Virus record (IMG/VR): IMGVR_UViG_3300025141_000016
Location: 186,001 to 250,000 of that record
Length of the DNA: 64,000 bases
Strand: one strand, 5' to 3'
The notes below the pieces were generated by a model, which saw only the letters and a list, made by a program, of their open reading frames with translations, was not told where the DNA came from and did not search any database. Position 1 is the stretch's first letter; each line of letters starts with the position of its first letter. Below are positions 2,981-64,000 of the stretch, in pieces. The position numbers were made by a program, and so were the translations under genes.

Positions 2981-3643
2981 TCAGTCAGCCATAAAACCGA
3001 GTTGGACCCCGGCTGGGACCGCCCATGCGTAGGGCTCATCCCAATCCATCTGCCCGTGCTTGACAGCCCACTTTGCCAGCCACAGCAGGTAGGCTTCCAA
3101 CGACTTCTGCATCGGGATCTTGACGTTCGTGGGGAGGCGGATCTCGGTGAGATCCTTGATGTTCTTGAAGATTTGCTTGTCTGGAATCTGGTCCGTCAGC
3201 TTGTACCCCTTTTCTCGGGCGGCCAACTGGTCGAACGAGAGTTTCAGCTTCATCTTTGCCATGAAGGGGAAGATGCGATCTGGGGCGTATTGCGCCGACA
3301 TACCAGCGAGACGGGCCAGTCTCTCCCGACGGGAATCATGCTTCGCCGTTGCGGTGCCGGGACACTTGGATGCGGTACGCTTCATCCCCCGGAGAGCCTT
3401 GCCCACCATAGACAGCGCATCTCCCACAAGGTCATTGACCTCTCCGCTCATGCCCTGGGATTCCAAGTAGCGTGCGGTATCCGTCAAAGCGTCTTCTGCT
3501 TTGGTGAGTTTGGGCTTGGCCGTGGCCCAAACGTAGTCCCAGTTGCCAGCCAACTTCGCCAGGATCTTCCGGCGCGTGGGGTCACCCTTGGGAAGCCCAG
3601 CGGCTTTGTGGATGAGTGCGAAACGGTCGGGGTCAGTAGGCAT
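2981..3643 (-). CDS. tag-A protein, hypothetical
   Basis: N-terminal DRFALIHKAAGLPKGDPTRRKILAKLAG; internal KRTA. Confidence 0.8.
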   Translation of the reverse strand: MPTDPDRFALIHKAAGLPKGDPTRRKILAKLAGNWDYVWATAKPKLTKAEDALTDTARYLESQGMSGEVNDLVGDALSMVGKALRGMKRTASKCPGTATAKHDSRRERLARLAGMSAQYAPDRIFPFMAKMKLKLSFDQLAAREKGYKLTDQIPDKQIFKNIKDLTEIRLPTNVKIPMQKSLEAYLLWLAKWAVKHGQMDWDEPYAWAVPAGVQLGFMAD

Positions 3644-3684
3644 GGAAGGCTCCAGTGCGGGATGCTGCTTACCCTCCCCGCCCT

Positions 3685-3698
3685 ATAGAAAACCTACC
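3685..3698 (-). promoter_or_regulatory. class L promoter motif
   Basis: GGT-AGGTTTT-CTAT, 42 nt before ATG 3643. Confidence 0.55.
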
Positions 3699-3771
3699 CA
3701 CCCCAAAAAACTGACCGACTCGTGTCCGTTTGGCGGTTCTCGTTTCGTTTCCACCTATGGAGGAACGACCC

Positions 3772-4275
3772 ATGACCATCATCGGAACCCTTATCACCCT
3801 GCGCTACCCCCTCTCCGAAGCGGAGATCGAAGCCGTCATCAAAGACCGTGAGCGGACCTACCGCAAGACACGGGAATCCCTCGACCGAGTAGAGGGAGAG
3901 TGGGCCGACCGCATCCGTGCCCACATGGACTCTCCCCGCGCCAAGAAGCGTTGGGAAGTCGAGATGGAAGGGCTCCGTCGCATCTACCGCGTGTCCCCCG
4001 AGGACCGCCTACGGAACGAGTTGGACTTCTGGCAGCGGACGGAGGAGAGGTTGATGGAAGACCGGGAGGAGCCCAACGACTACCCCCTCCTCCCCTGGAT
4101 CTACAGTGCCCAGCGGGCACTGCGAAGGGACGACTTCTGGAAAGCCGTCCTCGTCCTGCGGGAAGCACTGGCTTCGGGCGTTCAAGTCCCCGAGGGCCTT
4201 GATGTTCTCCACGGGGAGATTTGGGAGGACGTGGACGTACCCCCTGTGGTCGATGCCCGAGCATGGCCCTCGTGA
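3772..4275 (+). CDS. hypothetical protein, paralog of 18053-18574
   Basis: GGAGG RBS; shares PLSExEI and PW...RAL...W.DV patterns with 18053-18574. Confidence 0.75.
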   Translation: MTIIGTLITLRYPLSEAEIEAVIKDRERTYRKTRESLDRVEGEWADRIRAHMDSPRAKKRWEVEMEGLRRIYRVSPEDRLRNELDFWQRTEERLMEDREEPNDYPLLPWIYSAQRALRRDDFWKAVLVLREALASGVQVPEGLDVLHGEIWEDVDVPPVVDARAWPS

Positions 4276-4403
4276 CCCCTTCGTATCCGCTTGGGGGCAC
4301 CCACTCCGTCTCTACCTATACAACCCCCGGAGATCCCATGAGCATGAGCACACCCATCTGGGAGATGAAGGACATAGATCCATCACCCATATGACCCCTG
4401 CAT

Positions 4404-4418
4404 CGGTAAGGTGGCTAT
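4404..4418 (+). promoter_or_regulatory. class L promoter motif
   Basis: CGGT-AAGGTGG-CTAT, 33 nt before ATG 4451. Confidence 0.6.
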
Positions 4419-4450: not shown

Positions 4451-4588
4451 ATGCCTATTACCGCCACCAACCGAAGAACCCTCATCCGAAAAGCTGCTTC
4501 CCTACCCGTGGGATTGGCTCGGGAGGTCCAGTCGGCTCTGGGGGGTGGGAAGCTACCTGACGAGTTCGATGAGCACAGCTTTGAATGA
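4451..4588 (+). CDS. 45-aa peptide consisting mostly of a partial tag A
   Basis: GGAGA RBS; MPITATNRRTLIRKAASLPVG...; stop overlaps ATG 4585. Confidence 0.65.
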   Translation: MPITATNRRTLIRKAASLPVGLAREVQSALGGGKLPDEFDEHSFE

Positions 4589-7500
4589 TGCCCAGGCCCT
4601 CCCATAAACGAGTCGCCCGTCGTTACGCTTCCCGCACCGCGAGTGAAGCAGAGAGGTTCCCCCACGGTCCCAATGGCCCCAAGGCCGATGAGTGGTTCAG
4701 GGCATGGAGAGCACGAATAGGCCCCTACATGAGAGGAGCCTGTTACGACTTGGCGGGGTTCCTTCACGATGAAGGCGGGTTTCCCGTATGGGGGGTGATT
4801 GATGAAGACGGTATCATCGCCCACGCCTTCGCGTACAACCCCCGCATCCGAAAGGGCTTGGATGCTCGGGGTGAGGTAGACCCCGAAGATATGATGGATG
4901 GGGTAATCGGTGCCGAAAGTGTCCGTCCCCTGACCAAGAAAGAGAACCGATCTCTGTGCTCCAGATGGGGCTCCGACGAACGTGACTTCGCCCAACAGTT
5001 CGGGAAATACCTTTGGGATTTACGGGGGAGTCGTCTCGGAGCAGCCTTACGCACCGCGACCTCTACCAAGATCCCCGCAAAGACTGTCTACGCAGGGGGG
5101 TGGGAATGGAACAAGGGAGGCTTCGCGGACTGGCCTTCATTCCGACGCAAGCCCAAAAGAGAGCAGATCGCGTGGGCGAAGGAATACGTTGGCTCTGGTA
5201 TCCGCGAGCCCGTTGAGGTCACCGTGTACTCGGACGGGGGCGTGGGGTTTACGGACGGCCACCATCGAGTCATGGCGGGAACACTGCTCGACATTGAGAT
5301 CCCCGTGCGGGTCAAGTCCCGCAACTTCGACAAAGACCTGTGGCCTGACCTCCTTGCTCTGTTGAAGGCTGGGTACACACCCAAGCAGTACAACCCGCAG
5401 GGGTGGAAGCTAACCAACTCCGGTGTGCCGCCCCTGGAGGTTGTTCGCCGTGGTCCCAACGCCGCTGACGAATGGATCATGTCGAACGAGAGGGTCAAGA
5501 CCGCAGCCCGTCCCATCCGTCTCCCGACACGGGAGATCAAGGCTCTCGCCAAGAAGTTGGCGCAGCGGCTCTACCAGTGGGGGCTGCCGAAGCCCGGTCG
5601 GGTGATCGCACAGGAGTACCTGCCTCTCACCAACGTCATGGGTGACGAGGTGGAGGTCGAGATTCTACTGACGGGTACGCCCAATAAGTGGCGTGACCCG
5701 TTCAGCAGCGAACTGGTCCAAGGCGGATTCGCTCTGACGCATAAGAGGTCCGATAATCCTTTGGTGCGGATCTTTGTGAACCCGGACTTGGGCACCCGGA
5801 CGTTTGAGATGCGACCTCGCAGGATTGTCGAGAGCGAGTTGTACGAAATCCTTGCTCACGAACTCACCCATGCCGCAGACACATGGCTGGGCAAAGGCTC
5901 GGCGGTGGGCGCACTGGAAGGGCTGGGGCCGGGTTCCCACCACAACCACCCGGCAGAGGTCAAGGCACTGATGCGGGACGTGGTGACGCACCTTGAAGAT
6001 GGCGAGTACGTCCGCGAGTTGATGGGCTACGGCATGGACTTCAACACGGCTTTCCGCGAGGCACTGAAGGAAACCCAGTGGCCGGACATTGAGCCCTACC
6101 TGACTCCGAAGAACCAGAAGACCATCCTCAAAGGGGTCTACACCCACCTCCAAGACCAAGGGCTCACCAAGGCCGCGAGCAGGACCGCTGGAGGGTTCCG
6201 TCGGATCATTGATGAGATCGAAGACAAGACAGGCTTGGAGGCCAAGGTCGAGGCCGGGGCTGACAACATCAAGATCGAGTTGAAGCGCGGGACGAAGATA
6301 GTCGGCTACTTCCGAGCCTCGACGGTAGACCCAAACAGCTTCCAATGGAAGGGGGCTCCTCTGGACTGCAAAGAGGCGTGGGGTCAGATAGGGGAGCCGC
6401 CAGTCTGGATTGTCCGAGGAGCCCTGCTGAGTTGGTGGCTCCGAGGCAAGGGGTTCGGCAAGCTGCTCTACAAGGCATTGTTCTCCCACATCGCCTCCAA
6501 GAAGGGCGTTGTGGGTCCGAACCGTTGCTCCGGGGGAAACACATCACCGGATGCACAGCGGGTCTGGAAAAGCCTACGCTCGATGTACCCGAAGCATGGT
6601 CCCTTGATCGACTTGCGGAAGATGGCATCAGCCAGCCGAGTAGCCTCCCGGTTCCGCAGGATGGAAGCGGGAATGAGGACCGTCAAAGACCTTCCTGACG
6701 ACTGGTACGTCGAGATCACCGGTTCACTGTCGAATCTCGGCATCTATCTGCTGGACGGTGATGACAACACCGTAGGAAGTTTGGACATCCACCGGACAGG
6801 GGACTTCCTCCAAATCAACGAGATTCAGGCACGTCAGGGGTGGGGGCCGCTTCTTTACGATCTGGCTATGGAAGTCGCAAACGAGTTCAATGACGAGGGA
6901 CTAATGCCCGACCGTTCCTCGGTTTCGCGTGAAGCACGGGCGGTCTGGGAGCACTACCTCAATCGCCGTTCGGACGTTGAAGCGACCCTCTTGCCAGAGT
7001 GGGTACATGAACTCGCGGGTTCAGGGCACGTTCGCACACACTTGGACCGATATGAACCTGATTCCCCCCTGTCATACTCTTACCGGAAGACCACTGGAAA
7101 CCCGTTCATGCGGCAACTGGCGCTCCAAGGTCAGTTGGAGTCTGACGATTACTCTTTCGACCTCCCACGGGCCGCCGCCAGCCGTGTCGCCTCCCGGTAC
7201 GCAGGCCGAGCCTACTGCATCTGCTGGCCGACTGACGGATTGCTCTACGTCGAGGTGCCCAGCTACGACCACCTCCGCAATCTGTTGTTGACGCAGAAAT
7301 GGCGCGGGGACGCGCATTTGCGAACGAAGGACGGCTATGTCCCGTACTTCGGTGGCGGCATCGCCTTCAGCTTCACGAAGATGCGGATGAAGGGAGTCCA
7401 CCCCGTCTGGTACATCCGCAAGGGCTTCACAAAGCAACAGGCCGTGGCCCATCTGGTGGAGGATGGCTTGTTTGTGAGCGAGCGAGACGCGCTGCGTCAC

Positions 7501-9144
7501 GCTGAAGGGGATTACCCTGGCGAGTGTGAGTGGAAAGGCAAGAAGGGCCTATCGTTTACCCCGGATGCCATCGAATACGTCTGGTTAGGTAAGCGGGCAG
7601 GCAAACCGTTCGATGAGGCGAAGGCCGAGCTTCACCAGTTCATTCCCGACCTCGACGTGCGGTCGGAGGCCCCACCTTCGGGCAACAGTCCGTGCCGAGT
7701 TGCCTCCCGGTTCCGCAGGATGGAAGCGGGGCTCCTACAAGCCCCGCCGAAACTCGTCAAAGCCGTGACCGAATGGGCACAGGCCACCTTCGCTGACCGC
7801 GCCCACCACAACGCCCTGGCCAAACAGGCCAAGTTCGACCGGACAGGAGCCGGAATCATCGGGGGTCAGGACACCCTCGATCTGTGGTTCAAGAGCATGA
7901 AGCCTTGGAAGCGCACCTCCGCTGGGAAAGGGGGTGAGGTGTCCACTACGTTCGACCTCACCGACTACCTTGATGGTTGGCGGTATCGGCACCTCTGGGA
8001 CAACCTCAATGCAGGCGAGCAACGTGCTCTCCGCAAAGGCCCTCTCCGTCCGATCACCGTGACCAACGCTTTTGATGAGGGACGTTCGGGTGCCATGGGT
8101 GCTTGGTCAGACAAGAGACATGAGTTCCAAGTGTGGCTCCCCGCCGATGTCTGGATGCCAGAAGTCATCCCCGACCTTGTGGAGAAGCACGACAAACTCA
8201 TCCCGAAAACCGTTCGCCACGAGTTGCAGCACGCCACCCAAGTCATCCTCGGTGCCTTGACGGGTCAGGATTACGGGGGCCTCCCGAAACGGAAGGTGAG
8301 GCAGCCTCACAGCATCGAGGAACAACGCCAGAAGCAGATTGAGGACAACGCATCCGCATCGCGTGAAACCTTCCGCTTTCCACCAGACACGTCCAGCCCA
8401 CGCGACGACCGACGGCGAGATCGGTATTACCGCTCTGATCTGGAGTACCAGACCTCCCTCACCGATGCCGTGGGCGATTGGGAGTCCGACTCCCTACCTC
8501 CGGTGCAACGATGGTTGGACGAGACGGACCTCAATGACCGCGACAAGGGCAAGGTGCTTCGGTGGGCTGTTCGCACCTTCGTCGGTGAAGGGCGAGCACG
8601 GTTCCCCACCCTTCCGCGTGACTTCAAACGCCCTGACTGGAACCCAGGCAAGATCAAGCCGTCCGAGTTCTTTACGCACATCAAGGGCGACCGGGAGCGG
8701 TGGGCAGATGCCGTGGCGACCTTTTACAAGGAGATCGCCCGCACCACCAAACTCGCCCGCCGTGTAGCTACCCGGTATGCGAAGCGTGACTACCCGAAAG
8801 CCGGAGGCTCCGTGAGTGGGCTGCGGGTCAAAGGGGATGCCCCCAACCAGAACTCCATCAGCGCCTCGTTCTCCGACTATGAAGTGCTCCCCGACGTGCG
8901 AGAGGTACCCCTCTCCGACTTCGATGCCGCACCACATGACATGTTCTACTCGGCAAGTGACCTGGGGAGGGTCCGAGAACTCGCGGAAGCCATCGAACAC
9001 AACGGCTGGATTGCACCTCTCATCGTGGTCATAGACGATGACCCCAAGCCGTACATTCTGGAAGGAGCACACCGACTCGCCGCACTGCACACCCTGTCGA
9101 AACGAACCTTCCCCGCCCTCGTGGTGAGAGACCTCGACGGATGA
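4585..9144 (+). CDS. polyvalent polyprotein: papain-like, ParB-like, zincin, GNAT, GNAT, unknown, zincin, ParB-like; tag-B linkers
   Basis: GACY...AHAF...LDARG; DGHHR; HELTH; LRGKGFGKLLY; QGWGPLLYDL; HELQH; LEGAHRL. Modules are separated by SRVASRF/Y, RRVATRY and [KR]TA. Confidence 0.85.
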   Translation: MMPRPSHKRVARRYASRTASEAERFPHGPNGPKADEWFRAWRARIGPYMRGACYDLAGFLHDEGGFPVWGVIDEDGIIAHAFAYNPRIRKGLDARGEVDPEDMMDGVIGAESVRPLTKKENRSLCSRWGSDERDFAQQFGKYLWDLRGSRLGAALRTATSTKIPAKTVYAGGWEWNKGGFADWPSFRRKPKREQIAWAKEYVGSGIREPVEVTVYSDGGVGFTDGHHRVMAGTLLDIEIPVRVKSRNFDKDLWPDLLALLKAGYTPKQYNPQGWKLTNSGVPPLEVVRRGPNAADEWIMSNERVKTAARPIRLPTREIKALAKKLAQRLYQWGLPKPGRVIAQEYLPLTNVMGDEVEVEILLTGTPNKWRDPFSSELVQGGFALTHKRSDNPLVRIFVNPDLGTRTFEMRPRRIVESELYEILAHELTHAADTWLGKGSAVGALEGLGPGSHHNHPAEVKALMRDVVTHLEDGEYVRELMGYGMDFNTAFREALKETQWPDIEPYLTPKNQKTILKGVYTHLQDQGLTKAASRTAGGFRRIIDEIEDKTGLEAKVEAGADNIKIELKRGTKIVGYFRASTVDPNSFQWKGAPLDCKEAWGQIGEPPVWIVRGALLSWWLRGKGFGKLLYKALFSHIASKKGVVGPNRCSGGNTSPDAQRVWKSLRSMYPKHGPLIDLRKMASASRVASRFRRMEAGMRTVKDLPDDWYVEITGSLSNLGIYLLDGDDNTVGSLDIHRTGDFLQINEIQARQGWGPLLYDLAMEVANEFNDEGLMPDRSSVSREARAVWEHYLNRRSDVEATLLPEWVHELAGSGHVRTHLDRYEPDSPLSYSYRKTTGNPFMRQLALQGQLESDDYSFDLPRAAASRVASRYAGRAYCICWPTDGLLYVEVPSYDHLRNLLLTQKWRGDAHLRTKDGYVPYFGGGIAFSFTKMRMKGVHPVWYIRKGFTKQQAVAHLVEDGLFVSERDALRHAEGDYPGECEWKGKKGLSFTPDAIEYVWLGKRAGKPFDEAKAELHQFIPDLDVRSEAPPSGNSPCRVASRFRRMEAGLLQAPPKLVKAVTEWAQATFADRAHHNALAKQAKFDRTGAGIIGGQDTLDLWFKSMKPWKRTSAGKGGEVSTTFDLTDYLDGWRYRHLWDNLNAGEQRALRKGPLRPITVTNAFDEGRSGAMGAWSDKRHEFQVWLPADVWMPEVIPDLVEKHDKLIPKTVRHELQHATQVILGALTGQDYGGLPKRKVRQPHSIEEQRQKQIEDNASASRETFRFPPDTSSPRDDRRRDRYYRSDLEYQTSLTDAVGDWESDSLPPVQRWLDETDLNDRDKGKVLRWAVRTFVGEGRARFPTLPRDFKRPDWNPGKIKPSEFFTHIKGDRERWADAVATFYKEIARTTKLARRVATRYAKRDYPKAGGSVSGLRVKGDAPNQNSISASFSDYEVLPDVREVPLSDFDAAPHDMFYSASDLGRVRELAEAIEHNGWIAPLIVVIDDDPKPYILEGAHRLAALHTLSKRTFPALVVRDLDG

Positions 9145-10478
9145 TCAAACCCTCTGCCAGCCGTGTTGCCTCCCGGTATGCGGGCCGCTCTGTCCCTCCC
9201 TTCAAGGTTCGGGATGCGGCGGCGAAGACACCTTCGGATCTGCCCGATGGGTGGTATGTGGTTGCCCGCTGGGTCGGCCCGTCGAGGTCATTCCAGTTGT
9301 ACGACGGAAAGAAAGAGGTCGGGTATATCCGAGCGACCCCGAACTCCTCCTGTGGTGGGGCCTATACGGTGCGTCAAGTATGGGCACCCTCCGGTTGGGG
9401 TCCGATGCTCTATGACCTGATGATGGAGGATGCGGGTCGTTATGGGGTGATGCCGGATCGAAGTCAGGTATCGGAAGACTCCGCTCGTGTTTGGTTCCAC
9501 TACCTCACGAAACGCCGCCGTGATGTGACCGCACACCCTTTGTGGGATGACCCCTCCATTCGTGATGATCGGGCGTGCGGCTATCATTATGAAGATACTG
9601 GTCCCGGTGTGTTTGAGTCCTTGGACTATCGGTACGTCAAGGACGGTCGCGGAGTGACGGGCTCACTGGAGCGTGAGGGCAGGCTCTTTGAAGGTGAGCA
9701 TCCCGAGTGGTCCGGTGTCCGAAAAGAAGCTGTGGCGCAGCGGTATGCGAAGCGACCCTTCGACCTCGCCATGAACGGACTGAAAGGTCTGGACGAGGGA
9801 AGGACCGTGACCCTGTACCACGGCACCACACGATCCTTCGACCGCTTTGACCTCACCAAGTCCAGGGACGAACTCGTCAACGACTTCTACGGCAAGGGGA
9901 TCTTCCTGACCCCATCCAAGAACGTCGCCTGGAAGTACGCCAACGCCAACCGGAACATCGGCCTCGACCCCAGCATCATTGGCGAACTGAAACGCAAGAA
10001 GCCCCAGGCCGGAGCCTTTCTGGAAAGCCTCTACTCCCAGGGATCCGATGCCTGGGAACCCATGCTCGCAGAAGCCAAAGCCGCAGGGCACGAACCCTAC
10101 GAGCACGAGGACTTCCTCAACGGGGTGGACGGGAACACCCTCGGTGACATAGCGGGGTACATCGAAGGGAGTGCAGTCCCACCACGCGGGGGCGGCTCAA
10201 CCAACATCTTCTCGACCAGTAGCGGTGCCCCCTACTGGCTCTACGACACCCTCGATGAAGTGGGCCTCGACTCCTCGGCGTACCGACCCAAGGTCTACAC
10301 CGTTGGGGTCACCGTACAGAACCCCCTCATCACCGCAAGCGCATCCGAAGCCCGCAAGGCAAGAGCCAATGGCTACGACAGCGTGGTCTTCCACGGCTCT
10401 CGGCTGGTCGATGGCTGGCCCGAGGTCGCCGTGTTTTCACCCAGGAACGCCAAGATCAAAAAGGTCGAGGTCGAGTAA
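9141..10478 (+). CDS. tag-B protein: GNAT plus ADP-ribosyltransferase-like (ART-PolyVal type) domain
   Basis: SASRVASRY; GWGPMLYDLMME; LYHGT...YGKGIFLT...GYDSV...EVAVF. Confidence 0.8.
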   Translation: MIKPSASRVASRYAGRSVPPFKVRDAAAKTPSDLPDGWYVVARWVGPSRSFQLYDGKKEVGYIRATPNSSCGGAYTVRQVWAPSGWGPMLYDLMMEDAGRYGVMPDRSQVSEDSARVWFHYLTKRRRDVTAHPLWDDPSIRDDRACGYHYEDTGPGVFESLDYRYVKDGRGVTGSLEREGRLFEGEHPEWSGVRKEAVAQRYAKRPFDLAMNGLKGLDEGRTVTLYHGTTRSFDRFDLTKSRDELVNDFYGKGIFLTPSKNVAWKYANANRNIGLDPSIIGELKRKKPQAGAFLESLYSQGSDAWEPMLAEAKAAGHEPYEHEDFLNGVDGNTLGDIAGYIEGSAVPPRGGGSTNIFSTSSGAPYWLYDTLDEVGLDSSAYRPKVYTVGVTVQNPLITASASEARKARANGYDSVVFHGSRLVDGWPEVAVFSPRNAKIKKVEVE

Positions 10479-10598: not shown

Positions 10599-10613
10599 CG
10601 GTGACTTCCCTAT
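10599..10613 (+). promoter_or_regulatory. class L promoter motif
   Basis: CGGT-GACTTCC-CTAT, 30 nt before ATG 10643. Confidence 0.65.
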
Positions 10614-11824
10614 CGGACCCGTAGGGTCAGGAGAAACTAACCATGTCCAAGACCATTACCGCTTCTGACCGGAGCCGATTGATTCGACTCGCTTCAACAA
10701 TGTCTGCTGGCTCTCCCGAGCGGAAGGCCATCCTCGCTGGGTTGTCAAAGACCGCTGGAGAACACCCGCTGGGCCGCATGGCAATCGTCTACTTCGATTT
10801 GATCATTGAGGCTTACAACATTGAGGAGGACGCGGAAAACGGTGACGAGTTCGCACAGAGCCTCATGGATGATGGTGGTCGAGGTATGAACAAGTTGGAG
10901 GGTGACGCTCTCAAAAACCTGTCCCGCATGTTCGGACAGCGAATCAGCAACGAGGGGCATGGCCCCGACGGCGCACTTGTCTGCAAGTTCCCAGTGAACT
11001 CGTGGGCAGAGGTCAAGAAAGCCAATGACGTAATCAACAAGAACCACACTGGCGGTGACGATAACATCGACACGGGCGTTCAGTACGTTGAGGCACGGGA
11101 CTTTCGCCTCCACCCGGAGGGCGTGGGACAAAATCAGGCTTTCTACGGTGAGCACTCCCGTGCAGAGGGTGATTGGGACGAGTGGCTGTCCGACCACAAG
11201 TAATCCCTATCGGACCCGTAGGGTCAGGAGAAACTAACCATGCCCAAGACCATTACCGCTTCTGACCGAGCCAGCTTGATCCGGCTCGCTTCCTGTCTAC
11301 CCGTAGAGCGGAAGGCAATCCTGGCTGGGCTCCAGAAGACGGCAGCCATGGAGCCGTGGGATTCCCCCGATTACGTCTTTGAAGACCCAAAGGATGAAGA
11401 TGACTACATCACTCTCTTTGAGGAAGGGACCACACGCCACTACGATGTGAACGTCTCTGGCCGCGTGGATTCAGCGAAGGATGGGCTCCTCCTACTCCAC
11501 AAGGAGTTCGGTCGTGGGGGTAAGGAAAGCCGCGACTTTGAGGGTCAGTACCTCTGGGGGACAGGCTACTCCATCACAGCGATCCCCCCAAACAATCTGT
11601 CCTATGAGCGGTGGCATAACGACAAGGCCCACTTGGCAAAGATCCACAAGGTTCTGGACAGGATCAAGAAGATGCCAGGAGTCAAAAAGGTCAGCTTGGA
11701 GGAACGGCCCGACAGTGCAGACCTGCATAAGAAACAAGGGCAGGCCATGAAGCGGTGGGTCGCCAAGGGTCGGACCCTGCGAACTGCGAAGAAGACACCC
11801 TATCGGACCCGTAGGGTCAGGAGA
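10608..11824 (+). repeat. three exact 27-nt leader repeats CCCTATCGGACCCGTAGGGTCAGGAGA
   Basis: Copies at 10608-10634, 11205-11231 and 11798-11824, each followed by ATG and a tag-A coding sequence; internal hairpin GACCC-GTA-GGGTC. Confidence 0.95.
10643..11203 (+). CDS. tag-A protein, hypothetical cargo
   Basis: MSKTITASDRSRLIRLASTMSAGSPERKAILAGLSKTA. Confidence 0.85.
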   Translation: MSKTITASDRSRLIRLASTMSAGSPERKAILAGLSKTAGEHPLGRMAIVYFDLIIEAYNIEEDAENGDEFAQSLMDDGGRGMNKLEGDALKNLSRMFGQRISNEGHGPDGALVCKFPVNSWAEVKKANDVINKNHTGGDDNIDTGVQYVEARDFRLHPEGVGQNQAFYGEHSRAEGDWDEWLSDHK

Positions 11825-12244
11825 TACACCATGCCCAAGACCCTCACCGCAACTGACCGATCCCGATTGATCCGGCTCGCTTCCACTATGGCTGCTGGCT
11901 CTCCCGAACGGAAAGCGATCCTCGCGGGCTTGGAGAAGCAAGGGGGTGCGTCGAAGACGGCCTACAGCGACAAGTTTGGTCTTCGGTTCAACTTTCGGGA
12001 CGGTTTCTCATTCACGACGGTCCCTGTTGACCCCCCCTACAACCAGACATATTCGGGCTTTATCCTGATAAAGAAGCCCGGACGGGTGAAGGCGTACAGA
12101 GCGGCGATGGCCTACGTCAACCAGAACCGTAGGGAGATCGAACGCATGAAAAGAACAAAAGATGTTCTCGGTGCCATCAACGACTACGCCCGTCAGGTGA
12201 GCGGTAAGGAGCCCTACTGGCACCGATACCTGATGCCAGACTGA
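11240..12244 (+). CDS. double tag-A protein (in-frame fusion of two cassettes; internal start at 11831)
   Basis: Tag A at the N-terminus and again at ATG 11831, which has its own leader repeat and RBS. Confidence 0.85.
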   Translation: MPKTITASDRASLIRLASCLPVERKAILAGLQKTAAMEPWDSPDYVFEDPKDEDDYITLFEEGTTRHYDVNVSGRVDSAKDGLLLLHKEFGRGGKESRDFEGQYLWGTGYSITAIPPNNLSYERWHNDKAHLAKIHKVLDRIKKMPGVKKVSLEERPDSADLHKKQGQAMKRWVAKGRTLRTAKKTPYRTRRVRRYTMPKTLTATDRSRLIRLASTMAAGSPERKAILAGLEKQGGASKTAYSDKFGLRFNFRDGFSFTTVPVDPPYNQTYSGFILIKKPGRVKAYRAAMAYVNQNRREIERMKRTKDVLGAINDYARQVSGKEPYWHRYLMPD

Positions 12245-12259: not shown

Positions 12260-12784
12260 ATGCCCAAGACCATTACCGCTGCCGACCGATCCCGATTGAT
12301 CCGGCTCGCTTCCTCGATGCCCGTAGGCTCCGATGAGCGGAAAGCCATCCTCGCTGGGTTGAGGGTTGCTGACCGCGCTATCGACAAAGCCGTGGACTAT
12401 CTGGTGAAGGCCCAGCGTATTCTCTCGGGAGTCCCCGGATGGGGCACTGCTCCGTATGGGGGGTATGACCGCTCCCTGACCGAGTTGATCAAGGTCTTAC
12501 GGGCCGGACCCAACAAGAAGGCTTCAGCTTCGTTGAAGGATGTGCTGCGAAAGTGGCCCGAGTTTGCCCCCGAGATCCAAAAGGAACTGCGAGGGCTGCG
12601 GGCGGCGTTGCGAGGCGACCCCGACTTCGGGCGCGTGAGTAATGCCCTCATACAGATCCAGATGCGGCTGGAAGACGACCACCGCAGAGACCCAGCGGCT
12701 TTCCATGCCCGCGCACCCTTCAACAAAGCACTCGCTGACTTTGCAAAGGCCGAGTACGAACACAAGACGGGCAATAAGTGGTAG
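12260..12784 (+). CDS. tag-A protein, hypothetical cargo
   Basis: MPKTITAADRSRLIRLASSMPVGSDERKAILAGLRVA. Confidence 0.85.
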   Translation: MPKTITAADRSRLIRLASSMPVGSDERKAILAGLRVADRAIDKAVDYLVKAQRILSGVPGWGTAPYGGYDRSLTELIKVLRAGPNKKASASLKDVLRKWPEFAPEIQKELRGLRAALRGDPDFGRVSNALIQIQMRLEDDHRRDPAAFHARAPFNKALADFAKAEYEHKTGNKW

Positions 12785-15157: not shown

Positions 15158-15175
15158 ACCCAAAACCCCAAACGC

Positions 15176-35944: not shown

Positions 35945-36015
35945 TTTGACCCCTTGGGGAAGGATGCTCGGCGGATCAATCGGCTTCGGTCAGCGGCGGT
36001 CAGGCTCTTGGACAT
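35941..36015 (-). CDS. 24-aa tag-A stub
   Basis: MSKSLTAADRSRLIRRASFPKGSK*; TAATG and ATGA couplings; not in the ORF track. Confidence 0.6.
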   Translation of the reverse strand: MSKSLTAADRSRLIRRASFPKGSK

Positions 36016-40052: not shown

Positions 40053-40946
40053 CTAAATGAAGCTGCGCGGGCTCAACACGCCCCGCCCCACGTTCGGGCC
40101 AAACGCGGATCTGACCCCACGCCCGAATCGGGGCTGCGCGAGTCCACGCATGTACTTGGTTGTGCGAGACTTGGCCTCGCATAGCTTGTCCCACTGGTCT
40201 TCGGCGTTCTGCTTCATGCCCTCGTACTTGCTGGACTTCTCGACGGAGAGGCTGATCCCACCGATGCTGTAGTCGAACTCGTTGGCAATCCAGTTGTAGG
40301 TGAGGGCTTGGGCCGCATTGACCAGAGCCCCCCAGAGCATCGCTGCTTTCCATGAGGGCTTCTGGGCGCAAAGCACCTCCAGTGTCCGCAGTTCCTCCGT
40401 TTCGGGGGGCTGCATGTTCCACTTCCACAAGGCCATCTCCAAATACTCCGCGAACTCCTCGTCCGTCCAGATGTAGCCAAAGACTTGGTTGAAGCACCCG
40501 ACCGTGCCTTCGCCCTCGGGGGGCATGAAGCGGTAGTTGCGGTCGGGGTTGTTATCCCTGGTGAGGAACCGCATCTTGCGGATGAGGTCAGTCACGCAGG
40601 TCGAGTAGGTGGACGAGGTGGTCACCGCGTCAGACACCACCCCCCATTCTTGGACTGCCCCTTCCTCGGGATCGACTGCTGTCTCACGGAAGCGCCATCG
40701 GATCACATAGTCACCGGGGACCGCACTCGCAGGGACTTGGAGGCTCGCGTAGTATTCCCCAACAGCCGGGTTGACCGGGGTACGGGTGGCTGACCCGATC
40801 AAGACCTCATCGCTCGTGTCAGGGTCCACGAGGTAGATGGCGTAGGAGATGCTGAAAGCGTTGACCGGATTCCCCGTATCGTTGGACAGGAAAATGTCGA
40901 GATCCCCTCGCTGTAGGGTTTCTCCTTGTGTGAAGACGACGCTCAT
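40053..40946 (-). CDS. probable virion structural protein (Ig-like N-terminus plus neck/connector-like helical part)
   Basis: AGGAGG RBS; beta-rich N-terminus (VGEYYA...PGDYVIRW); FDYSIGGISLSV. Function is inferred. Confidence 0.5.
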   Translation of the reverse strand: MSVVFTQGETLQRGDLDIFLSNDTGNPVNAFSISYAIYLVDPDTSDEVLIGSATRTPVNPAVGEYYASLQVPASAVPGDYVIRWRFRETAVDPEEGAVQEWGVVSDAVTTSSTYSTCVTDLIRKMRFLTRDNNPDRNYRFMPPEGEGTVGCFNQVFGYIWTDEEFAEYLEMALWKWNMQPPETEELRTLEVLCAQKPSWKAAMLWGALVNAAQALTYNWIANEFDYSIGGISLSVEKSSKYEGMKQNAEDQWDKLCEAKSRTTKYMRGLAQPRFGRGVRSAFGPNVGRGVLSPRSFI

Positions 40947-40974: not shown

Positions 40975-40989
40975 ATAGACGACCTACCG
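40975..40989 (-). promoter_or_regulatory. class L promoter motif
   Basis: CGGT-AGGTCGT-CTAT, 29 nt before ATG 40946; back-to-back with the 40999 copy. Confidence 0.65.
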
Positions 40990-40998
40990 CCCCCCAAT

Positions 40999-41013
40999 CG
41001 GTAGGCCGCCTAT
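40999..41013 (+). promoter_or_regulatory. class L promoter motif
   Basis: CGGT-AGGCCGC-CTAT, 43 nt before ATG 41056. Confidence 0.65.
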
Positions 41014-45500: not shown

Positions 45501-45504
45501 CCCC

Positions 45505-59135: not shown

Positions 59136-59150
59136 CGGTAGGAGCCCTAT
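59136..59150 (+). promoter_or_regulatory. class L promoter motif
   Basis: CGGT-AGGAGCC-CTAT, 29 nt before GTG 59179. Confidence 0.65.
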
Positions 59151-60243: not shown

Positions 60244-60693
60244 ATGTCCAAGACCCTTACTGGATCTGACCGTAAACGCCTCATCCGCCTTGCTTCTACC
60301 CTCCCCACGGGGTCAGATGAGCGGAAGGCTATCCTTGCTGGGCTTCACCATGTCGCCGTCCACAAGACCGCCTCCAAGAAGACCACCCTCTCGGCAGATT
60401 TGAAGTTGAAGGACGGGACCGTGTACGCGAAGGGATCGCGTGCAGAGGTGTTCTTCTCGGAGCGCAACCCCTCCATGTCCGAGGTGGAGATTGAGGGTAG
60501 GAAGATCAAACTCCGCACGGTCAGTCTCCACAAGTACCTCCGTGGTTTTCCAAAGCCCCCCTCCACGAGAGCCTTGCAGAAGATGGACAGTGAGGCTTCC
60601 GGGCCAACGGTCAGTGGGGTACGCAACGTCGAGATGGACGGCTATGGTCCCGATGGGTCACCCTCGTGGATGCTGGCCATGGGGCTCATCTGA
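60244..60693 (+). CDS. tag-A protein, hypothetical cargo
   Basis: MSKTLTGSDRKRLIRLASTLPTGSDERKAILAGL...HKTAS. Confidence 0.85.
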   Translation: MSKTLTGSDRKRLIRLASTLPTGSDERKAILAGLHHVAVHKTASKKTTLSADLKLKDGTVYAKGSRAEVFFSERNPSMSEVEIEGRKIKLRTVSLHKYLRGFPKPPSTRALQKMDSEASGPTVSGVRNVEMDGYGPDGSPSWMLAMGLI

Positions 60694-62384: not shown

Positions 62385-62497
62385 GGGATTCCTTGGAGTT
62401 CCGATGCCAGCAAGCTGGACAGGATGGGTGAGTGGTTTTTGGTCGAGGACGGGGACGGTGCTCTTACCGAGCGGGTCAAGGTCTGCGACTTCTCAAC

Positions 62498-62526
62498 ATC
62501 CTATCCGCCGTGACCCTATGGGTCAA
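62498..62526 (-). promoter_or_regulatory. sigma70-like promoter for the 62384 gene
   Basis: TTGACC-N17-TAGGAT. Confidence 0.45.
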
Positions 62527-62625
62527 CCCCACCTTGGCCATCAAGTGGATCGAAGTGGGCCAGATGCGGCCCCGTGCCCCATGCTTATTTTTTGGCGGGG
62601 GGATCACCCCTGATCAGGGTGGTGT

Positions 62626-62640
62626 CGGTAGGTCGTCTAT
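62626..62640 (+). promoter_or_regulatory. class L promoter motif
   Basis: CGGT-AGGTCGT-CTAT, 45 nt before ATG 62685. Confidence 0.65.
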
Positions 62641-62684
62641 CTGGGTAGTGGGGGTAGAAGAGAAGTCCCTTTGGAGAGATCCCC

Positions 62685-64000
62685 ATGAATCGCTACGCTG
62701 CCGCTTTGGTTCGTTTGGCGGTATCCCTGCCGTCAGGGAGCCGTGACCGCCGAGTGATCCTTGCTTTGATCAAAGAGGCGGGAGCCCGTGAGGATTTTCT
62801 GGCTCGCTACGAGTTCCTTGGGGGGCTCACCGGCAAGTCGGGTGATCGGGTCAAGAGTGATCTGAAGCAGGGCGACTACGAGCCGTATGTGAAGGCACTT
62901 GCCGCTAATGGCTGGGACGAGGGCACCGCACAGCGCCCCGGAGAGGCCCTTACGTTCGTTGACCCCACGGCCAACATGGGGCTGTGGACGGCTTTGGTGA
63001 GGGGCGGAAACTCGGCCTTGGGCCGTGCCGTGGACGAGGTGGCCAAGTGGCAACCTGCCCTGTCAGGAATCTCTGGTGAGGATGTTGCCCAGGTACTCTC
63101 ACACGGGGGTCAACACTGGCCTGGGATGCGCTTCGACTCTCGCGTGAAGAATGAGAAAGGTGGCTTTGGTGATTATGTCGAGCGCGTGAGCGGCGAGGAG
63201 CCCTACGCGACTGGAGACAACATCTTCCGGTCTGTCGGGAAGGAACTGAAGTCCAAGAAGTTCAACCTCGCTTTCATTATCAAGAGGTTGATGGGGATTG
63301 CCCGCAACAAGACGAAGGATTGGGTCCGCTCGGTGGATGCCGGGAAGTGGGAGGGACCATTCCCCGAAACCGAGGAAGGCCAGCAGATTGTCCCGAGGGG
63401 ATACACACCCCCGGACCCTGCTGACATGCTCACCAAGGAGTTGTATCTGAAAGCCATCGATCCCGTGATGAAGCGGGTGTTGGCTGATGCCCCTGCACAG
63501 GCTCGGATTTGGGAGGCTCTGTTGGCTTCCGTCCAGGCCAACAAGAACTTTCTTGGGGTATCCGCGAGAGGAAAGGGGGAGGGTGATGTGACCCTGGAGG
63601 GCACGAAGTTCCGTCCCTTCATGGAGAAGTATTTTGAGGGGCAGACGGATGAAGACGACAACCCCATCCGAATCCCCACCACCCAGAAGATCGCCGCAAA
63701 CTTCCAGAAACTCCTGAAGAAGATGAGGGCTGCGTTGGCGGGTCTTTCCGACGCAGAGTTGGCCAAGGGGCTCCCGAGACAAGACCGTGAGATCCTGAAA
63801 GACCGTGACATAGCGAGTGTCTACTGGTCGGAGGTCCATCGTCGCCGTCGGGCTTTGCTCATTCGTATGGCTTCCACGTTCCCCGTGGGGTCAGAACACC
63901 GCAAGGTGTTGCTCCGGCAGGCATCGGATGTGGGGGCGAAGGACGTGTTGACCGAGAAATCGCTCATCAAGTATTTGAAGGCGACGGGGGATACTGTCTC
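62685..64000 (+). CDS. tag-A protein with a possible ECF-sigma-like domain, runs off the right edge
   Basis: Not in the ORF track; open from ATG 62685 to the window end. Tag A at the N-terminus and at about 63850; SGEDVAQ, RLMGIARNKTKDWVR, KLLKKMRAAL between them. Confidence 0.75.
   Translation, partial: MNRYAAALVRLAVSLPSGSRDRRVILALIKEAGAREDFLARYEFLGGLTGKSGDRVKSDLKQGDYEPYVKALAANGWDEGTAQRPGEALTFVDPTANMGLWTALVRGGNSALGRAVDEVAKWQPALSGISGEDVAQVLSHGGQHWPGMRFDSRVKNEKGGFGDYVERVSGEEPYATGDNIFRSVGKELKSKKFNLAFIIKRLMGIARNKTKDWVRSVDAGKWEGPFPETEEGQQIVPRGYTPPDPADMLTKELYLKAIDPVMKRVLADAPAQARIWEALLASVQANKNFLGVSARGKGEGDVTLEGTKFRPFMEKYFEGQTDEDDNPIRIPTTQKIAANFQKLLKKMRAALAGLSDAELAKGLPRQDREILKDRDIASVYWSEVHRRRRALLIRMASTFPVGSEHRKVLLRQASDVGAKDVLTEKSLIKYLKATGDTV

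What the first reader, a model, noticed from the sequence alone, without database searches (positions are those of the whole stretch)
2981..64000. Tag A: a reusable ~30-aa address label on unrelated proteins, candidate capsid-loading system
Seen: R..LIR[LK]AS.[MLF]P.GS.ER[KR].IL[AS][GA]L, in full or partial form, occurs about 13 times. It is N-terminal at 3643(-), 4451, 10643, 11240, 12260, 35205(-), 35558(-), 36015(-, stub), 60244 and 62685, and internal at 11831, near 36200-36270(-) and near 63850. The sequences that follow it share no visible similarity. Most copies are followed by KTA, RTA, RVA or KEA, and many of the genes lie behind the same upstream motif as the baseplate-like gene. Established: T4 internal proteins use a short N-terminal capsid targeting sequence removed by the prohead protease, and phiKZ-like phages process many inner-head proteins. 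Inference: tag A is a helix-turn-helix docking peptide that loads interchangeable cargo into the prohead for injection. Unlike the T4 sequence it appears internally and repeatedly. I do not recognise it as a described family.
Basis: partly seen in the sequence, partly recalled or inferred. Interest (0 to 1): 0.92.

Follow-up and report, generated by a model that had tools for sequence, protein, structure and literature searches.

The report
Reusable docking tag on phage proteins
A giant uncultured phage puts the same, almost invariant 34-residue helix-loop-helix module on about a dozen otherwise unrelated small proteins; the module is found on more than 1,700 protein clusters of related phages and in no described family, and most likely works as an address label that docks interchangeable cargo onto one shared partner, possibly the virion.

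Summary
A profile built from six copies finds exactly 13 copies in the window, at the stated positions (E 1e-19 to 5e-4; the next hit has E 0.18).

Conservation is at the protein level. The consensus is M[SP][RK]TLTASDR.ALIRLAS.LP.GS.ER[RK]AILAGL.K.A, a basic helix-loop-helix.

The module is absent from Pfam, PDB sequences, GenBank phages and bacterial genomes. It occurs on 1,775 protein clusters in metagenomes and in at least 25 large IMG/VR phage contigs. The window is bases 186,001-250,000 of a 297-kb contig.

Cargo is hypervariable: 78 tagged ORFs fall into 58 clusters, mostly without a known domain.

The module is not only N-terminal. It also occurs internally and at extreme C-termini, up to four times per protein. 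Some internal copies come from in-frame fusion of tagged units.

No recognised replication enzyme carries it. Several tagged genes share a phage-specific upstream motif with a putative neck protein and a polyvalent-protein operon. None sits behind the sigma-70-like promoters.

Best reading: a position-independent docking domain. Loading into the virion for co-injection, as with T4 internal proteins, is plausible but unproven. Removal by a prohead protease is not supported. It is an undescribed module and a new variant of a known strategy.

The parts
3533..3643 (-). Tag copy (divergent), N-terminus of ORF 2981-3643 (220 aa)
   Evidence: HMM E=4.5e-4 with the seed model and 8e-16 with the 12-copy model. 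The gene is also called publicly. The motif GGTAGG-N4-CTAT lies at 3685-3698 upstream.
4451..4588 (+). 45-aa mini-ORF that is little more than a tag with a degenerate second helix; its stop overlaps (ATGA) the start of the 1519-aa gene 4585-9144
   Evidence: HMM E=6e-16; frames read; called as a 45-aa gene in a public assembly.
4585..9144 (+). Untagged giant protein (1519 aa) with a weak ParB-like C-terminal region, directly behind the mini tag ORF
   Evidence: PHROG ParB-like hits at residues 1437-1516; precomputed weak Pfam ParB_N hit.
9141..10478 (+). Untagged ART-PolyVal protein between the giant gene and the tag-gene array
   Evidence: Pfam PF18760, E=1.2e-10.
10643..11203 (+). Tag (10643-10759) plus 147-aa cargo of unknown fold
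   Evidence: HMM E=2.9e-12 / 5e-19; no Pfam or PHROG hit.
11240..12244 (+). In-frame fusion of two tag-cargo units. Tags lie at 11240-11347 (with a 3-residue deletion in the loop) and 11831-11947 (which keeps its own Met, RBS and upstream element)
12260..12784 (+). Tag (12260-12376) plus 135-aa cargo
   Evidence: HMM E=5.7e-18; exact protein found on 7 public contigs.
10609..10636 (+). Repeated upstream element CCCTATCGGACCCGTAGGGTCAGGAGA. Further copies lie at 11206-11233 and 11799-11826, each about 34 nt before a tag-gene ATG
   Evidence: It resembles the leader of the connector-like gene in L017 and L031.
34411..35205 (-). Tag (35092-35205) plus 226-aa cargo; an ortholog in L027 is 57% identical
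   Evidence: HMM E=2.5e-19.
35205..35558 (-). Tag (35442-35558) plus 78-aa cargo
   Evidence: HMM E=8e-19; exact protein on 10 public contigs.
35579..36015 (-). Split tag gene. The stub 36015-35941 holds the first helix. ORF 35944-35579 (121 aa) starts with the second helix in another frame. The two overlap by ATGA
   Evidence: The sequence is identical in three assemblies. The cargo is 38% identical to part of L012:14302-15252, which clusters with the Peptidase_C39_2 protein L023:10393-11646.
36015..37886 (-). 623-aa chain of modules with an internal tag at 36189-36305 and a possible vestige of a first helix (RSALVRLAS) at 37809-37838
   Evidence: Internal tag E=4.7e-8 / 1e-13. Residues 41-280, 287-379, 384-530 and 567-623 each recur elsewhere as separate proteins. 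Three of those (41-280, 384-530, 567-623) follow an N-terminal tag; the 287-379 module starts at about residue 3 of its relatives, ahead of their later tags. The vestige itself is not significant (iE 23).
40053..40946 (-). Putative virion neck/connector-like protein (297 aa), the most conserved gene of the clade. It lies upstream of, and on the same strand as, the 34411-37886 tag island
   Evidence: 28% identity (E=4e-23) to Tunturi_5 gp319, annotated 'head-tail connector', which sits next to tail genes. Family of 1593 clusters. The AF2 model is a beta-sandwich plus a helical bundle. BFVD hits are phage G gp165 and tail-type proteins. The one PDB portal-adaptor hit is weak.
40975..41013 (.). 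Divergent pair of GGTAGG-N4-CTAT motifs, one in front of the connector-like gene (-) and one in front of the operon UvrD-like 1193 aa / 288 aa / ART-PolyVal 1247 aa (+)
   Evidence: 6 copies in the window against 0.02 expected.
59137..59150 (+). GGTAGG-N4-CTAT motif in front of the gene that precedes tag gene 60244
   Evidence: gene calls.
60244..60693 (+). Tag (60244-60360) plus 110-aa cargo
   Evidence: HMM E=3.4e-18.
62627..62640 (+). GGTAGG-N4-CTAT motif 58 nt before the multi-tag gene
62685..64000 (+). Conserved multi-tag protein (478 aa in full; it runs past the window end). Tags lie at 62685-62789 (N-terminal, divergent) and 63825-63941
   Evidence: HMM E=1e-4 / 1e-13 and 2.4e-16. The full gene is L005:12442-13878. 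Orthologs in other phages carry N-terminal, middle and extreme C-terminal tags. Synteny with the family of gene 61218-62384.

Best explanation
The tag is a small, basic helix-loop-helix docking domain of about 34 residues: helix 1 DR..LIRLAS, loop LP.GS, helix 2 ER[RK]AILAGL. It works in any position of a polypeptide and ties otherwise unrelated accessory proteins to one conserved partner encoded by this clade of large phages.

The most likely partner is a component of the assembling virion, either the inside of the procapsid or the portal/neck region. On that reading the tagged proteins, and through small tagged adaptors perhaps also the neighbouring untagged giant polyvalent proteins, are packed and delivered into the next host together with the DNA. 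This is the logic of the T4 internal proteins and the P1 Dar proteins.

Shown here:
- the module exists;
- it is conserved at the protein level;
- it is modular and independent of position;
- it is restricted to phages;
- its cargo is hypervariable;
- it is absent from recognised replication enzymes;
- it shares upstream motifs with a putative virion gene.

Inferred:
- that it binds a partner at all;
- that the partner belongs to the virion;
- that the cargo is injected.

Proteolytic removal of the tag is not part of this explanation.
For: Conservation. 12 or more positions are at least 85% conserved across 303 distinct copies, including surface-type charged residues (D-4, R-3, R+2, E+13, R+14, R/K+15). 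Nothing is conserved beyond +25. That pattern fits a fixed interface on a conserved partner.

Structure. A two-helix unit with so small a hydrophobic core is unlikely to fold alone. AF2 gives helix-loop-helix for both copies of the 478-aa protein, but with pLDDT of only 37-59 and no packing onto the rest of the protein.

Distribution.
- 1,775 protein clusters in the metagenome library.
- 43 loci on about 25 viral contigs of up to 297 kb.
- Only 2 MAG contigs among 185,579 species genomes.
- None in GenBank phages.

Cargo. 58 clusters among 78 tagged ORFs. Known domains are rare, and those found are of the conflict/effector kind: ADP-ribosyltransferase exoenzyme, pentapeptide and beta-solenoid repeats, DUF2958, DUF3846, Peptidase_C39_2. 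T-even internal proteins are described in the same terms, as a highly diverse set of defence proteins sharing only a capsid targeting sequence (PMC3012670).

Gene neighbourhood. Tag genes sit next to giant and ART-PolyVal proteins in the window and in L003 and L023. Phage-encoded polyvalent proteins are predicted to be packaged and injected (PMC5512222).

Promoters.
- GGTAGG-N3-4-CTAT occurs 6 times in the window against 0.02 expected.
- It precedes two tag genes, the gene just before a third, the putative connector-like gene and the polyvalent operon.
- In related loci, 7 of 22 genes led by the motif are N-tagged, against 38 of 654 genes overall.
- The sigma-70-like promoters (TTCAAC-N17-TATAG) precede no tag gene.

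Linkage. A tag gene lies directly beside the connector-like gene in L009, L016, L017, L019 and L031.

Multi-tag proteins. Proteins with up to 4 copies fit multivalent binding to a repeated surface.
Against: - No capsid, portal, scaffold, protease or terminase gene was identified within the roughly 125 kb of this genome that I could read.
- Canonical tags of the 297-kb contig map only to about 4.8, 198, 221, 246 and 287 kb. That arm is dominated by replication, recombination and nucleotide-metabolism genes.
- The 'connector' label rests on 28% identity to a structure-based annotation, on synteny in another phage, and on weak Foldseek support.
- The timing of the shared promoter motif is unknown.
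- Unlike the T4 signal, the tag is long, occurs at C-termini and internally, and has no conserved cleavage motif.
- No direct evidence of binding exists, and no multimer prediction was possible.
Confidence: 0.42

Rival explanations
1. Intracellular hub binding. The tag recruits diverse phage proteins to a shared partner inside the infected cell, such as a phage replication or transcription factory, a cytoskeletal or compartment protein, or a host hub such as RNA polymerase. Nothing is packaged.
For: - The tags lie in a genome arm with RNR, UvrD- and RecD2-like helicases, RecA, SbcCD-like proteins, primase, clamp loader, a sigma-like factor and an actin-like Volactin gene.
- Position independence and multiple copies per protein are typical of interaction modules.
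- There are weak, sub-threshold matches of two copies to the Rnk N-terminus, from an RNA-polymerase secondary-channel binder (E 0.03-0.05).
Against: - No recognised replication or transcription enzyme carries the tag.
- Cargo turnover between related phages is extreme. That fits conflict effectors better than factory components.
- The Rnk match is below the curated cut-off and is absent from 8 of the 10 sequences tested.
Confidence: 0.25
2. Nucleic-acid binding. The tag is a minimal basic helix-hairpin-helix-like DNA or RNA anchor that tethers cargo to the phage or host genome.
For: - The 32-residue core has a mean net charge of +3.3, and 75% of copies are at +3 or above.
- The LP.GS loop between two short helices resembles by eye the hairpin of HhH motifs (my recollection, not a test).
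- One tagged cargo family carries a ParB-like DGHHRW motif.
- Multi-tag proteins could bridge DNA.
Against: - No HhH family of Pfam matches, even at E up to 10.
- hhalign of 273 tags against the HhH domain of this clade's own RecD2-like helicases gives a probability of 0.2%.
- No PDB sequence matches.
- Invariant acidic residues (D-4, E+13) and strict conservation of almost every residue are unusual for a non-specific DNA anchor.
Confidence: 0.12
3. Docking on the outside of the virion. The tag plugs accessory proteins onto a tail, neck or baseplate hub, as conserved N-terminal docking peptides do for secondary receptor-binding proteins in branched Klebsiella phage tails.
For: - The tags are adjacent to the connector-like gene.
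- In L003 and L023 they are adjacent to a 1,700-1,800-aa protein with faint DUF2460 and sheath-C matches, a PG_binding_1 protein and a Peptidase_C39_2 protein.
- Docking peptides are known in branched receptor-binding systems (PMC6872550 and PMC13352976, listed).
Against: - The cargo proteins are small (45-300 aa). All but about 5 of 77 lack the beta-helix or fibre character of receptor-binding proteins.
- The tail-type hits on the giant protein are below the Pfam thresholds.
Confidence: 0.08
4. Self-association. Tags bind each other, forming four-helix bundles, so that tagged proteins and the conserved multi-tag protein assemble into an oligomeric body or condensate.
For: - Proteins exist that consist of two tags and a linker (P0022, 87 aa; P0071, 133 aa).
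- A conserved core protein carries 2-4 tags.
- The hydrophobic face is too small for a stable monomer.
Against: - AF2 did not pack the two tags of the 478-aa protein together.
- No oligomer prediction was possible.
- This reading is compatible with the best explanation rather than exclusive of it.
Confidence: 0.08
5. Not a functional protein module. The copies are a DNA-level repeat, such as a recombination or gene-conversion tract or a mobile promoter-leader cassette, or a chance similarity.
For: Copies 10643, 11831 and 12260 share about 80% DNA identity. Copies 10643, 11240 and 11831 also share an upstream element.
Against: - 56% of same-residue codon pairs use different codons.
- Most copy pairs are 35-65% identical in DNA but strongly conserved in protein.
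- The same protein consensus holds across contigs of 52-68% G+C.
- HMM E-values reach 1e-19.
Confidence: 0.01

Closest known systems
T4 capsid targeting sequence of internal proteins (IPI-III, Alt)
   Same: One short shared sequence sits on a highly diverse, fast-evolving set of small accessory or defence proteins. Their genes lie outside the head gene cluster (PMC3012670). Cargo can be exchanged.
   Different: From the literature: the T4 signal is about 10 residues, strictly N-terminal, and removed by the prohead protease. Here the module is about 34 residues and is predicted to be helix-loop-helix. It also occurs internally and at C-termini, up to 4 times per protein, and has no conserved cleavage motif. 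Packaging is not shown.
P1 DarB N-terminal packaging signal / Dar system
   Same: An N-terminal stretch of up to 30 residues is sufficient to send a reporter into the capsid. The cargo are large anti-restriction proteins with helicase and ParB-like modules, loaded with the help of small partner proteins (PMC9024508; PMC5512222). Here, tag genes flank giant, helicase-containing and ART polyvalent proteins.
   Different: The P1 Dar proteins share no consensus signal. Here the consensus is nearly invariant across hundreds of proteins.
MuF polymorphic toxins and portal/MuF-fused polyvalent proteins
   Same: A conserved N-terminal head-associated domain is joined to variable C-terminal effector domains (PMC5576092; PMC5512222).
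   Different: MuF is a large folded domain with a Pfam family and is N-terminal only. The tag is 34 residues, belongs to no family, and can sit in any position.
P22-type scaffolding protein coat-binding helix-loop-helix
   Same: A basic helix-loop-helix of about 30 residues at a protein terminus docks onto the inside of the procapsid. It has been used to load foreign cargo (my knowledge of the literature).
   Different: There is no detectable sequence relationship: hhalign probability is 0.1% against the last 60 residues of P22 gp8. The P22 module sits on a single protein, not on a family of cargo.
Encapsulin cargo-loading peptides
   Same: Short terminal peptides, at the N- or C-terminus and sometimes repeated, dock unrelated cargo to the interior of an HK97-fold shell (my knowledge).
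   Different: These peptides are shorter and have different consensus sequences. They belong to a cellular nanocompartment, not a virion. No comparison was run.
Docking peptides of secondary receptor-binding proteins in branched phage tails
   Same: A conserved N-terminal peptide attaches exchangeable modules to a virion hub (papers listed).
   Different: Cargo in those systems are depolymerases or tailspikes. Here the cargo are mostly small globular proteins of unknown function.

Membership tests
T4-type capsid targeting sequence | Short (about 10 aa) signal at the extreme N-terminus only | tested here: not met
   The module spans about 34 aa. In the 150 best proteins, 133 tags are N-terminal, 78 internal and 35 C-terminal.
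T4-type capsid targeting sequence | Removed by the prohead protease at a conserved cleavage motif | tested here: inconclusive
   After AGL there is only K (48%) followed by small residues, then no conservation. No protease gene was identified. Processing cannot be seen in sequence.
T4-type capsid targeting sequence | Shared by otherwise unrelated, rapidly diversifying cargo proteins | tested here: met
   78 tagged ORFs fall into 58 cargo clusters, and the 150 database proteins into 85 clusters.
T4-type capsid targeting sequence | Cargo present in the virion and injected | not testable with these tools
   No isolate and no proteome are available.
P22-type scaffolding coat-binding domain | Basic helix-loop-helix of about 30 aa | tested here: met
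   AF2 secondary structure gives H4-14 / loop / H20+ and H377-396 / loop / H404-414, at low pLDDT. Mean net charge is +3.3.
P22-type scaffolding coat-binding domain | Sequence homology to the P22 gp8 C-terminus | tested here: not met
   hhalign probability 0.1%.
Helix-hairpin-helix (HhH) DNA-binding motif | Match to HhH profiles | tested here: not met
   No HhH family in Pfam at E up to 10. hhalign against the RecD2 HhH domain gives a probability of 0.2%.
Polyvalent-protein associated domains (Iyer et al. 2017; Pfam LPD/PolyVal families) | The tag itself matches one of the described domains | tested here: not met
   No Pfam family hits any tag or tagged window protein. Only untagged neighbours hit ART-PolyVal, and LPD22 weakly.
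Polyvalent-protein associated domains (Iyer et al. 2017; Pfam LPD/PolyVal families) | Several unrelated modules joined in one polypeptide of a phage | tested here: met
   The 623-aa protein 36015-37886 is a chain of four modules that occur as separate proteins elsewhere. ORF 11240-12244 is a fusion of two units.
Rnk/GreA-like N-terminal coiled coil | Score above the Pfam gathering threshold for PF14760 | tested here: not met
   14.6-15.3 bits against a cut-off of 23.7, in 2 of 10 sequences.
ParB/Srx domain (cargo of 36015-37886) | Profile match to ParB/Srx families or structures | tested here: not met
   No Pfam hit. The profile against PDB gives only an SRP54 chance hit. hhalign to the ParB-like region of the 1519-aa protein gives 2.4% over a 13-residue DGHHR-like motif.

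The most novel reading that the evidence does not exclude
A whole clade of uncultured large phages uses one position-independent 34-residue 'zip code' domain as a general cargo-loading system for the virion. Any protein with at least one copy is packed and co-injected. Small tagged proteins act as adaptors for untagged giant polyvalent proteins. A conserved multi-tag protein is the internal hub. Polyvalent proteins arise by in-frame fusion of tagged units.
Probability: 0.28. Interest if true: 0.85.

Novelty: new variant of a known kind. Interest (0 to 1): 0.7.

Why it matters
If the tag is a loading signal, it would be the first sequence-defined, family-wide capsid or virion address label. It could be recognised by a simple profile, and it would mark about 1,800 protein clusters of unknown function as candidate injected effectors of uncultured giant phages. 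That is a ready-made catalogue for anti-defence and host-takeover discovery.

Such a signal would also be a portable handle for loading foreign proteins into phage particles.

The fusion series seen here runs from separate tagged genes, through read-through fusions, to multi-module proteins. It offers a concrete route by which polyvalent proteins could evolve.

Even if the partner turns out not to be the virion, a 34-residue module this conserved on this many unrelated proteins points to an unknown central hub in the biology of these phages.

Tried and rejected
- DNA repeat or gene conversion as the cause. Rejected by codon analysis.
- Known-family searches for the tag:
  - Pfam on full proteins and on tags alone at E up to 10;
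  - PHROGs;
  - PDB sequences searched with a profile;
  - all negative, apart from sub-threshold Rnk_N hits.
- HhH hypothesis. hhalign against the clade's own RecD2 HhH domain was negative.
- P22 scaffold helix-loop-helix. Negative.
- Fusello_VP2_Capsid hits among tagged proteins. My reading, not located by any tool, is that the hit lies on a separate motif (KHPGRLH..FGIP...LLRALNLAKTLRK) in double-tag proteins such as L023:8939-10390, not on the tag.
- ParB identity of the cargo in 36015-37886. Not confirmed.
- Structure of the conserved multi-tag protein. The AF2 model is mediocre (pLDDT 65.6), both tags are at low confidence, and Foldseek against PDB gave nothing.
- GenBank phages. No DNA match to the window, and no tag match with either a one-tag or a four-tag query. 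The nearest isolate, Tunturi_5, and the uncultured 485-kb phage LR745208 share core genes but no tag.
- Bacterial and archaeal genomes. Only two MAG contigs.
- Search for the head module by walking the public contigs. About 125 kb was read (1-15 kb and 186-296 kb), and no capsid, portal, protease or terminase gene was recognised. One look-up failed because I gave the wrong start codon.
- A first attempt to scan viral contigs with all 12 copies failed for lack of a conserved stretch.
- Literature. A full-text search for the core string, and for conserved N-terminal packaging signals in jumbo phages, found no description of this module.

Full report
**1. What is there**

The window has about 60% G+C and no tRNA genes. 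It corresponds to bases 186,001-250,000 of the 297,104-bp viral contig IMGVR_UViG_3300025141_000016; I derived this from locus L002. The same phage was assembled independently in ENA samples.

A regular-expression scan found six clean copies of the motif. A profile built from them, run over all six reading frames, found 13 copies with domain E-values from 2.5e-19 to 4.5e-4. The next best segment has E = 0.18.

Nine copies start a gene, and public gene calls agree. The remaining copies are as follows.
- The copy at 11831 lies inside ORF 11240-12244. It retains a Met, a ribosome-binding site and the 27-nt element that also precedes genes 10643 and 11240. That ORF is therefore a read-through fusion of two tagged genes.
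- The stub at 36015 is the first helix of a tag. After a 2-nt indel, the second helix opens ORF 35944-35579 in another frame. The same state is present in three assemblies.
- The copies at about 36293(-) and 63837(+) are truly internal.

**2. Protein-level conservation**

Among window copies, 56% of codon pairs that encode the same residue use different codons. Most copy pairs are only 35-65% identical in DNA.

Over 303 distinct copies from the window, related loci and database proteins, the consensus is M[SP][RK]TLTASDR[SK]ALIRLAS[TS]LP[KV]GS[PE]ER[RK]AILAGL.K.A. Conservation of single positions:
- R-3: 86%
- L0: 90%
- R+2: 92%
- P+8: 86%
- G+10: 97%
- R+14: 97%
- L+18: 91%

Nothing is conserved after +25. 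The 32-residue core is basic, with a mean net charge of +3.3.

In the AF2 model of the window's 478-aa two-tag protein, both copies are helix-loop-helix with the LP.GS segment as the loop. Confidence is low (pLDDT 37-59), and neither copy packs onto the rest of the protein.

**3. Distribution**

A profile search of 1.84 billion representative proteins gave 1,775 proteins at E <= 1e-3 and 614 at E <= 1e-10.

In the best 150 proteins, tags are N-terminal 133 times, internal 78 times and at the extreme C-terminus 35 times, with up to four per protein. Only 14 of 63 internal copies have a Met at the canonical place. Many are instead preceded by KKAS. The module is therefore a domain that works in any position, not only an N-terminal signal.

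IMG/VR holds it in 43 loci on about 25 contigs of 4-297 kb and 52-68% G+C. One genome per species of bacteria and archaea yielded only two MAG contigs. GenBank phages have none. Nor do the nearest relatives sharing core genes, Tunturiibacter phage Tunturi_5 and the 485-kb uncultured phage LR745208.

In the roughly 125 kb of this genome that I could read, at least 18 copies are present. Canonical copies of the 297-kb contig map only to about 4.8, 198, 221, 246 and 287 kb. The pattern scan behind that statement recovers about half of the window copies. The absence between 15 and 186 kb is therefore a real skew, though not proof of zero.

**4. Cargo and architecture**

After masking the tag, 78 tagged ORFs fall into 58 clusters. 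Few have Pfam domains. Those found are beta-solenoid/hexapeptide/bactofilin-like repeats, pentapeptide repeats, an ADP-ribosyltransferase exoenzyme domain, DUF2958, DUF3846, L5 gp82, Peptidase_C39_2 and DnaJ-type zinc fingers. The window's own cargo proteins have no Pfam or PHROG hit, apart from one PHROG of unknown function.

The 623-aa protein 36015-37886 is a chain of modules. Residues 41-280, 287-379, 384-530 and 567-623 each occur elsewhere as separate proteins. Three of these (41-280, 384-530, 567-623) follow an N-terminal tag in those relatives; the 287-379 module begins near the N-terminus of relatives whose tags lie further along. Its first module has a DGHHRW motif reminiscent of ParB/Srx, but no profile test confirmed that.

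A second class is a conserved, syntenic core protein: the window gene 62685 and, for example, L024:8555-10825. It carries tags at the N-terminus, in the middle and at the extreme C-terminus. Its fold matched nothing.

Tag-only ORFs of 45-66 aa also exist. In the window, one of them overlaps by ATGA the start of an untagged 1,519-aa protein with a ParB-like end. That protein is followed by an ART-PolyVal protein and then by the array of tagged genes. In L023 (same genome) and L003, a small tagged gene likewise abuts a protein of 1,700-1,800 aa.

**5. Context and regulation**

The recognisable window genes are:
- ribonucleotide reductase;
- a UvrD-like helicase;
- a polynucleotide kinase/HAD protein;
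- CobS/CobT-like proteins;
- endonuclease VII;
- an HNH endonuclease;
- two ART-PolyVal proteins.

Flanking parts of the genome encode RecD2, RecA, SbcCD-like proteins, primase, clamp loader, a sigma-like factor, SNase, Hc1 and an actin-like protein. None of these carries a tag.

Two promoter-like classes stand out.
- A sigma-70-like element, TTCAAC-N17-TATAG, repeated in front of minus-strand genes at 16-25 kb. It never precedes a tag gene.
- GGTAGG-N3-4-CTAT, with 6 copies against 0.02 expected.

The second motif precedes:
- tag gene 2981-3643;
- the multi-tag gene 62685;
- the gene just before tag gene 60244;
- the operon of the UvrD-like and ART-polyvalent proteins;
- gene 40053-40946.

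Gene 40053-40946 is the most conserved protein of the clade: 1,593 clusters, 66-91% identical among the best 120, one with an intein. The evidence for what it is:
- It is 28% identical (E 4e-23) to Tunturi_5 gp319, annotated as head-tail connector and lying next to the minor tail, tail terminator and sheath genes. That annotation came from structure-based prediction (PMC11924767).
- My AF2 model is a beta-sandwich plus a helical bundle.
- It matches phage G gp165 and tail-type proteins in BFVD.
- It matches a portal-adaptor chain in PDB only weakly.

I therefore call it a putative virion neck/tail protein.

In five other contigs a tagged gene lies directly beside this gene. A variant of the motif precedes it in L017 and L031. 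Across related loci, 7 of 22 motif-led genes are N-tagged, against 38 of 654 genes overall.

**6. Interpretation**

Near-invariance of almost every residue, the small hydrophobic core, positional freedom and multivalency all argue for a docking domain that recognises one conserved partner.

Which partner is not shown. The virion is favoured by five points:
- the parallel with T4 internal proteins, which are diverse defence proteins sharing only a targeting sequence (PMC3012670);
- the P1 precedent, in which 30 N-terminal residues of DarB suffice for capsid loading (PMC9024508);
- the neighbourhood of polyvalent proteins, whose phage-encoded members are predicted to be packaged and injected (PMC5512222);
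- the promoter motif shared with a putative virion gene;
- the effector-like nature of the few identifiable cargo domains.

Against it stand the lack of any identified head gene near the tags and the replication-rich arm in which the tags lie. The shared promoter class could equally be a middle class. The proposed removal by a prohead protease has no support.

Rivals remain open: an intracellular hub, DNA binding, external virion docking and self-association. The DNA-repeat explanation is refuted.

**7. Comparison and novelty**

The strategy of a common address on polymorphic cargo is known from the T4 targeting sequence, the P1 Dar system, MuF polymorphic toxins (PMC5576092), the P22 scaffold helix-loop-helix and encapsulin loading peptides.

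The module itself matches none of the families tested. I found no description of it in the searchable literature.

It differs from the known capsid signals in four ways:
- length;
- strict consensus;
- positional freedom and copy number;
- scale, at 1,775 clusters.

I rate it a new variant of a known kind, with an interest of about 0.7.

Noticed in passing
window 16260-16307, 16987-17034, 17500-17547, 20212-20259, 21560-21607, 23400-23447, 24623-24670: Seven copies of a ~48-nt intergenic element. Read on the minus strand it is GGGGGG-TTCAAC-N17-TATAG(A/G), a sigma-70-like -35/-10 pair next to a G/C hairpin. It lies in front of minus-strand genes, including the CobS/CobT-like pair, and is probably the early-promoter class of this phage.
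   Followed up: partly
window 3685-3698(-), 13117-13130(-), 40975-40988(-), 41000-41013(+), 59137-59150(+), 62627-62640(+): GGTAGG-N3-4-CTAT: 6 exact copies against 0.02 expected. It has no -35-like partner and lies 40-60 nt before start codons. It is a candidate promoter for a phage-encoded sigma-like factor; a Sigma70_r4 protein is encoded at L046:1529-2137.
   Followed up: partly
window 17549-17780; 15055-15132 and 26685-26762; 14838-17160: A 76-nt unit repeated three times in tandem. Arrays of a 21-nt GTAAACGTAAC(A/T)GT unit at two places 11.6 kb apart. Several TGTGACAGTCAC palindromes. These look like operators or iterons flanking the 15-27 kb block (families D6-D10).
   Followed up: no
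window 22780-23230 (inside gene 21658-23307, minus strand): A repeat with a 12-15-nt period, encoding an acidic/glycine-rich low-complexity stretch in the N-terminal part of the CobT-like VWA protein (families D1 and D2).
   Followed up: no
window 20272-21522 (-): The CobS-like AAA_5 ATPase carries an N-terminal Ros/MucR-type zinc-finger match (E 8e-5). A Ros/MucR match also occurs in L010:4833-6341.
   Followed up: no
window 40053-40946 (-) and its family; L043:289-3303: The connector-like protein is extraordinarily conserved and abundant: 1,593 clusters, including Tara Oceans sequences. One member carries an intein (P0271). A relative's ribonucleotide reductase carries an intein with a LAGLIDADG domain.
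   Followed up: partly
window 4585-4588 and 35941-35944: Both tag-only mini-ORFs end in an ATGA overlap with the start codon of the next gene, which suggests translational coupling of a bare tag peptide to an untagged downstream protein.
   Followed up: partly
window 41056-49248 (+): An operon of a 1,193-aa UvrD-like helicase with a 263-aa N-terminal extension of unknown nature, a 288-aa protein and a 1,247-aa ART-PolyVal protein. It is divergently placed to the connector-like gene and sits behind the same motif. In make-up it recalls the P1 DarB-type packaged helicase proteins.
   Followed up: no
L023:8939-10390 (same genome, ~286 kb) and L037:1390-3123: Double-tag proteins carry the motif KHPGRLH..FGIP....IP..KI...I.KL......LLRALNLAKTLRK. 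I take it, without a tool locating the hit, to be what draws the weak Pfam Fusello_VP2_Capsid match.
   Followed up: partly
L024:8555-10825, L028:9197-12472, L032, L043 (orthologs of window gene 62685): A conserved VPDALKKHQF...DKDGDGKTNEPKP segment, which looks like a calcium-binding loop, lies just before the C-terminal tag. The middle tag is followed by an AGCEKLP..M..NCE cysteine motif.
   Followed up: no
L046:23752-24756 and 23211-23393 (same genome, ~294 kb): The genome encodes an actin-like Volactin-family protein and an Hc1 histone-like protein (precomputed Pfam).
   Followed up: no
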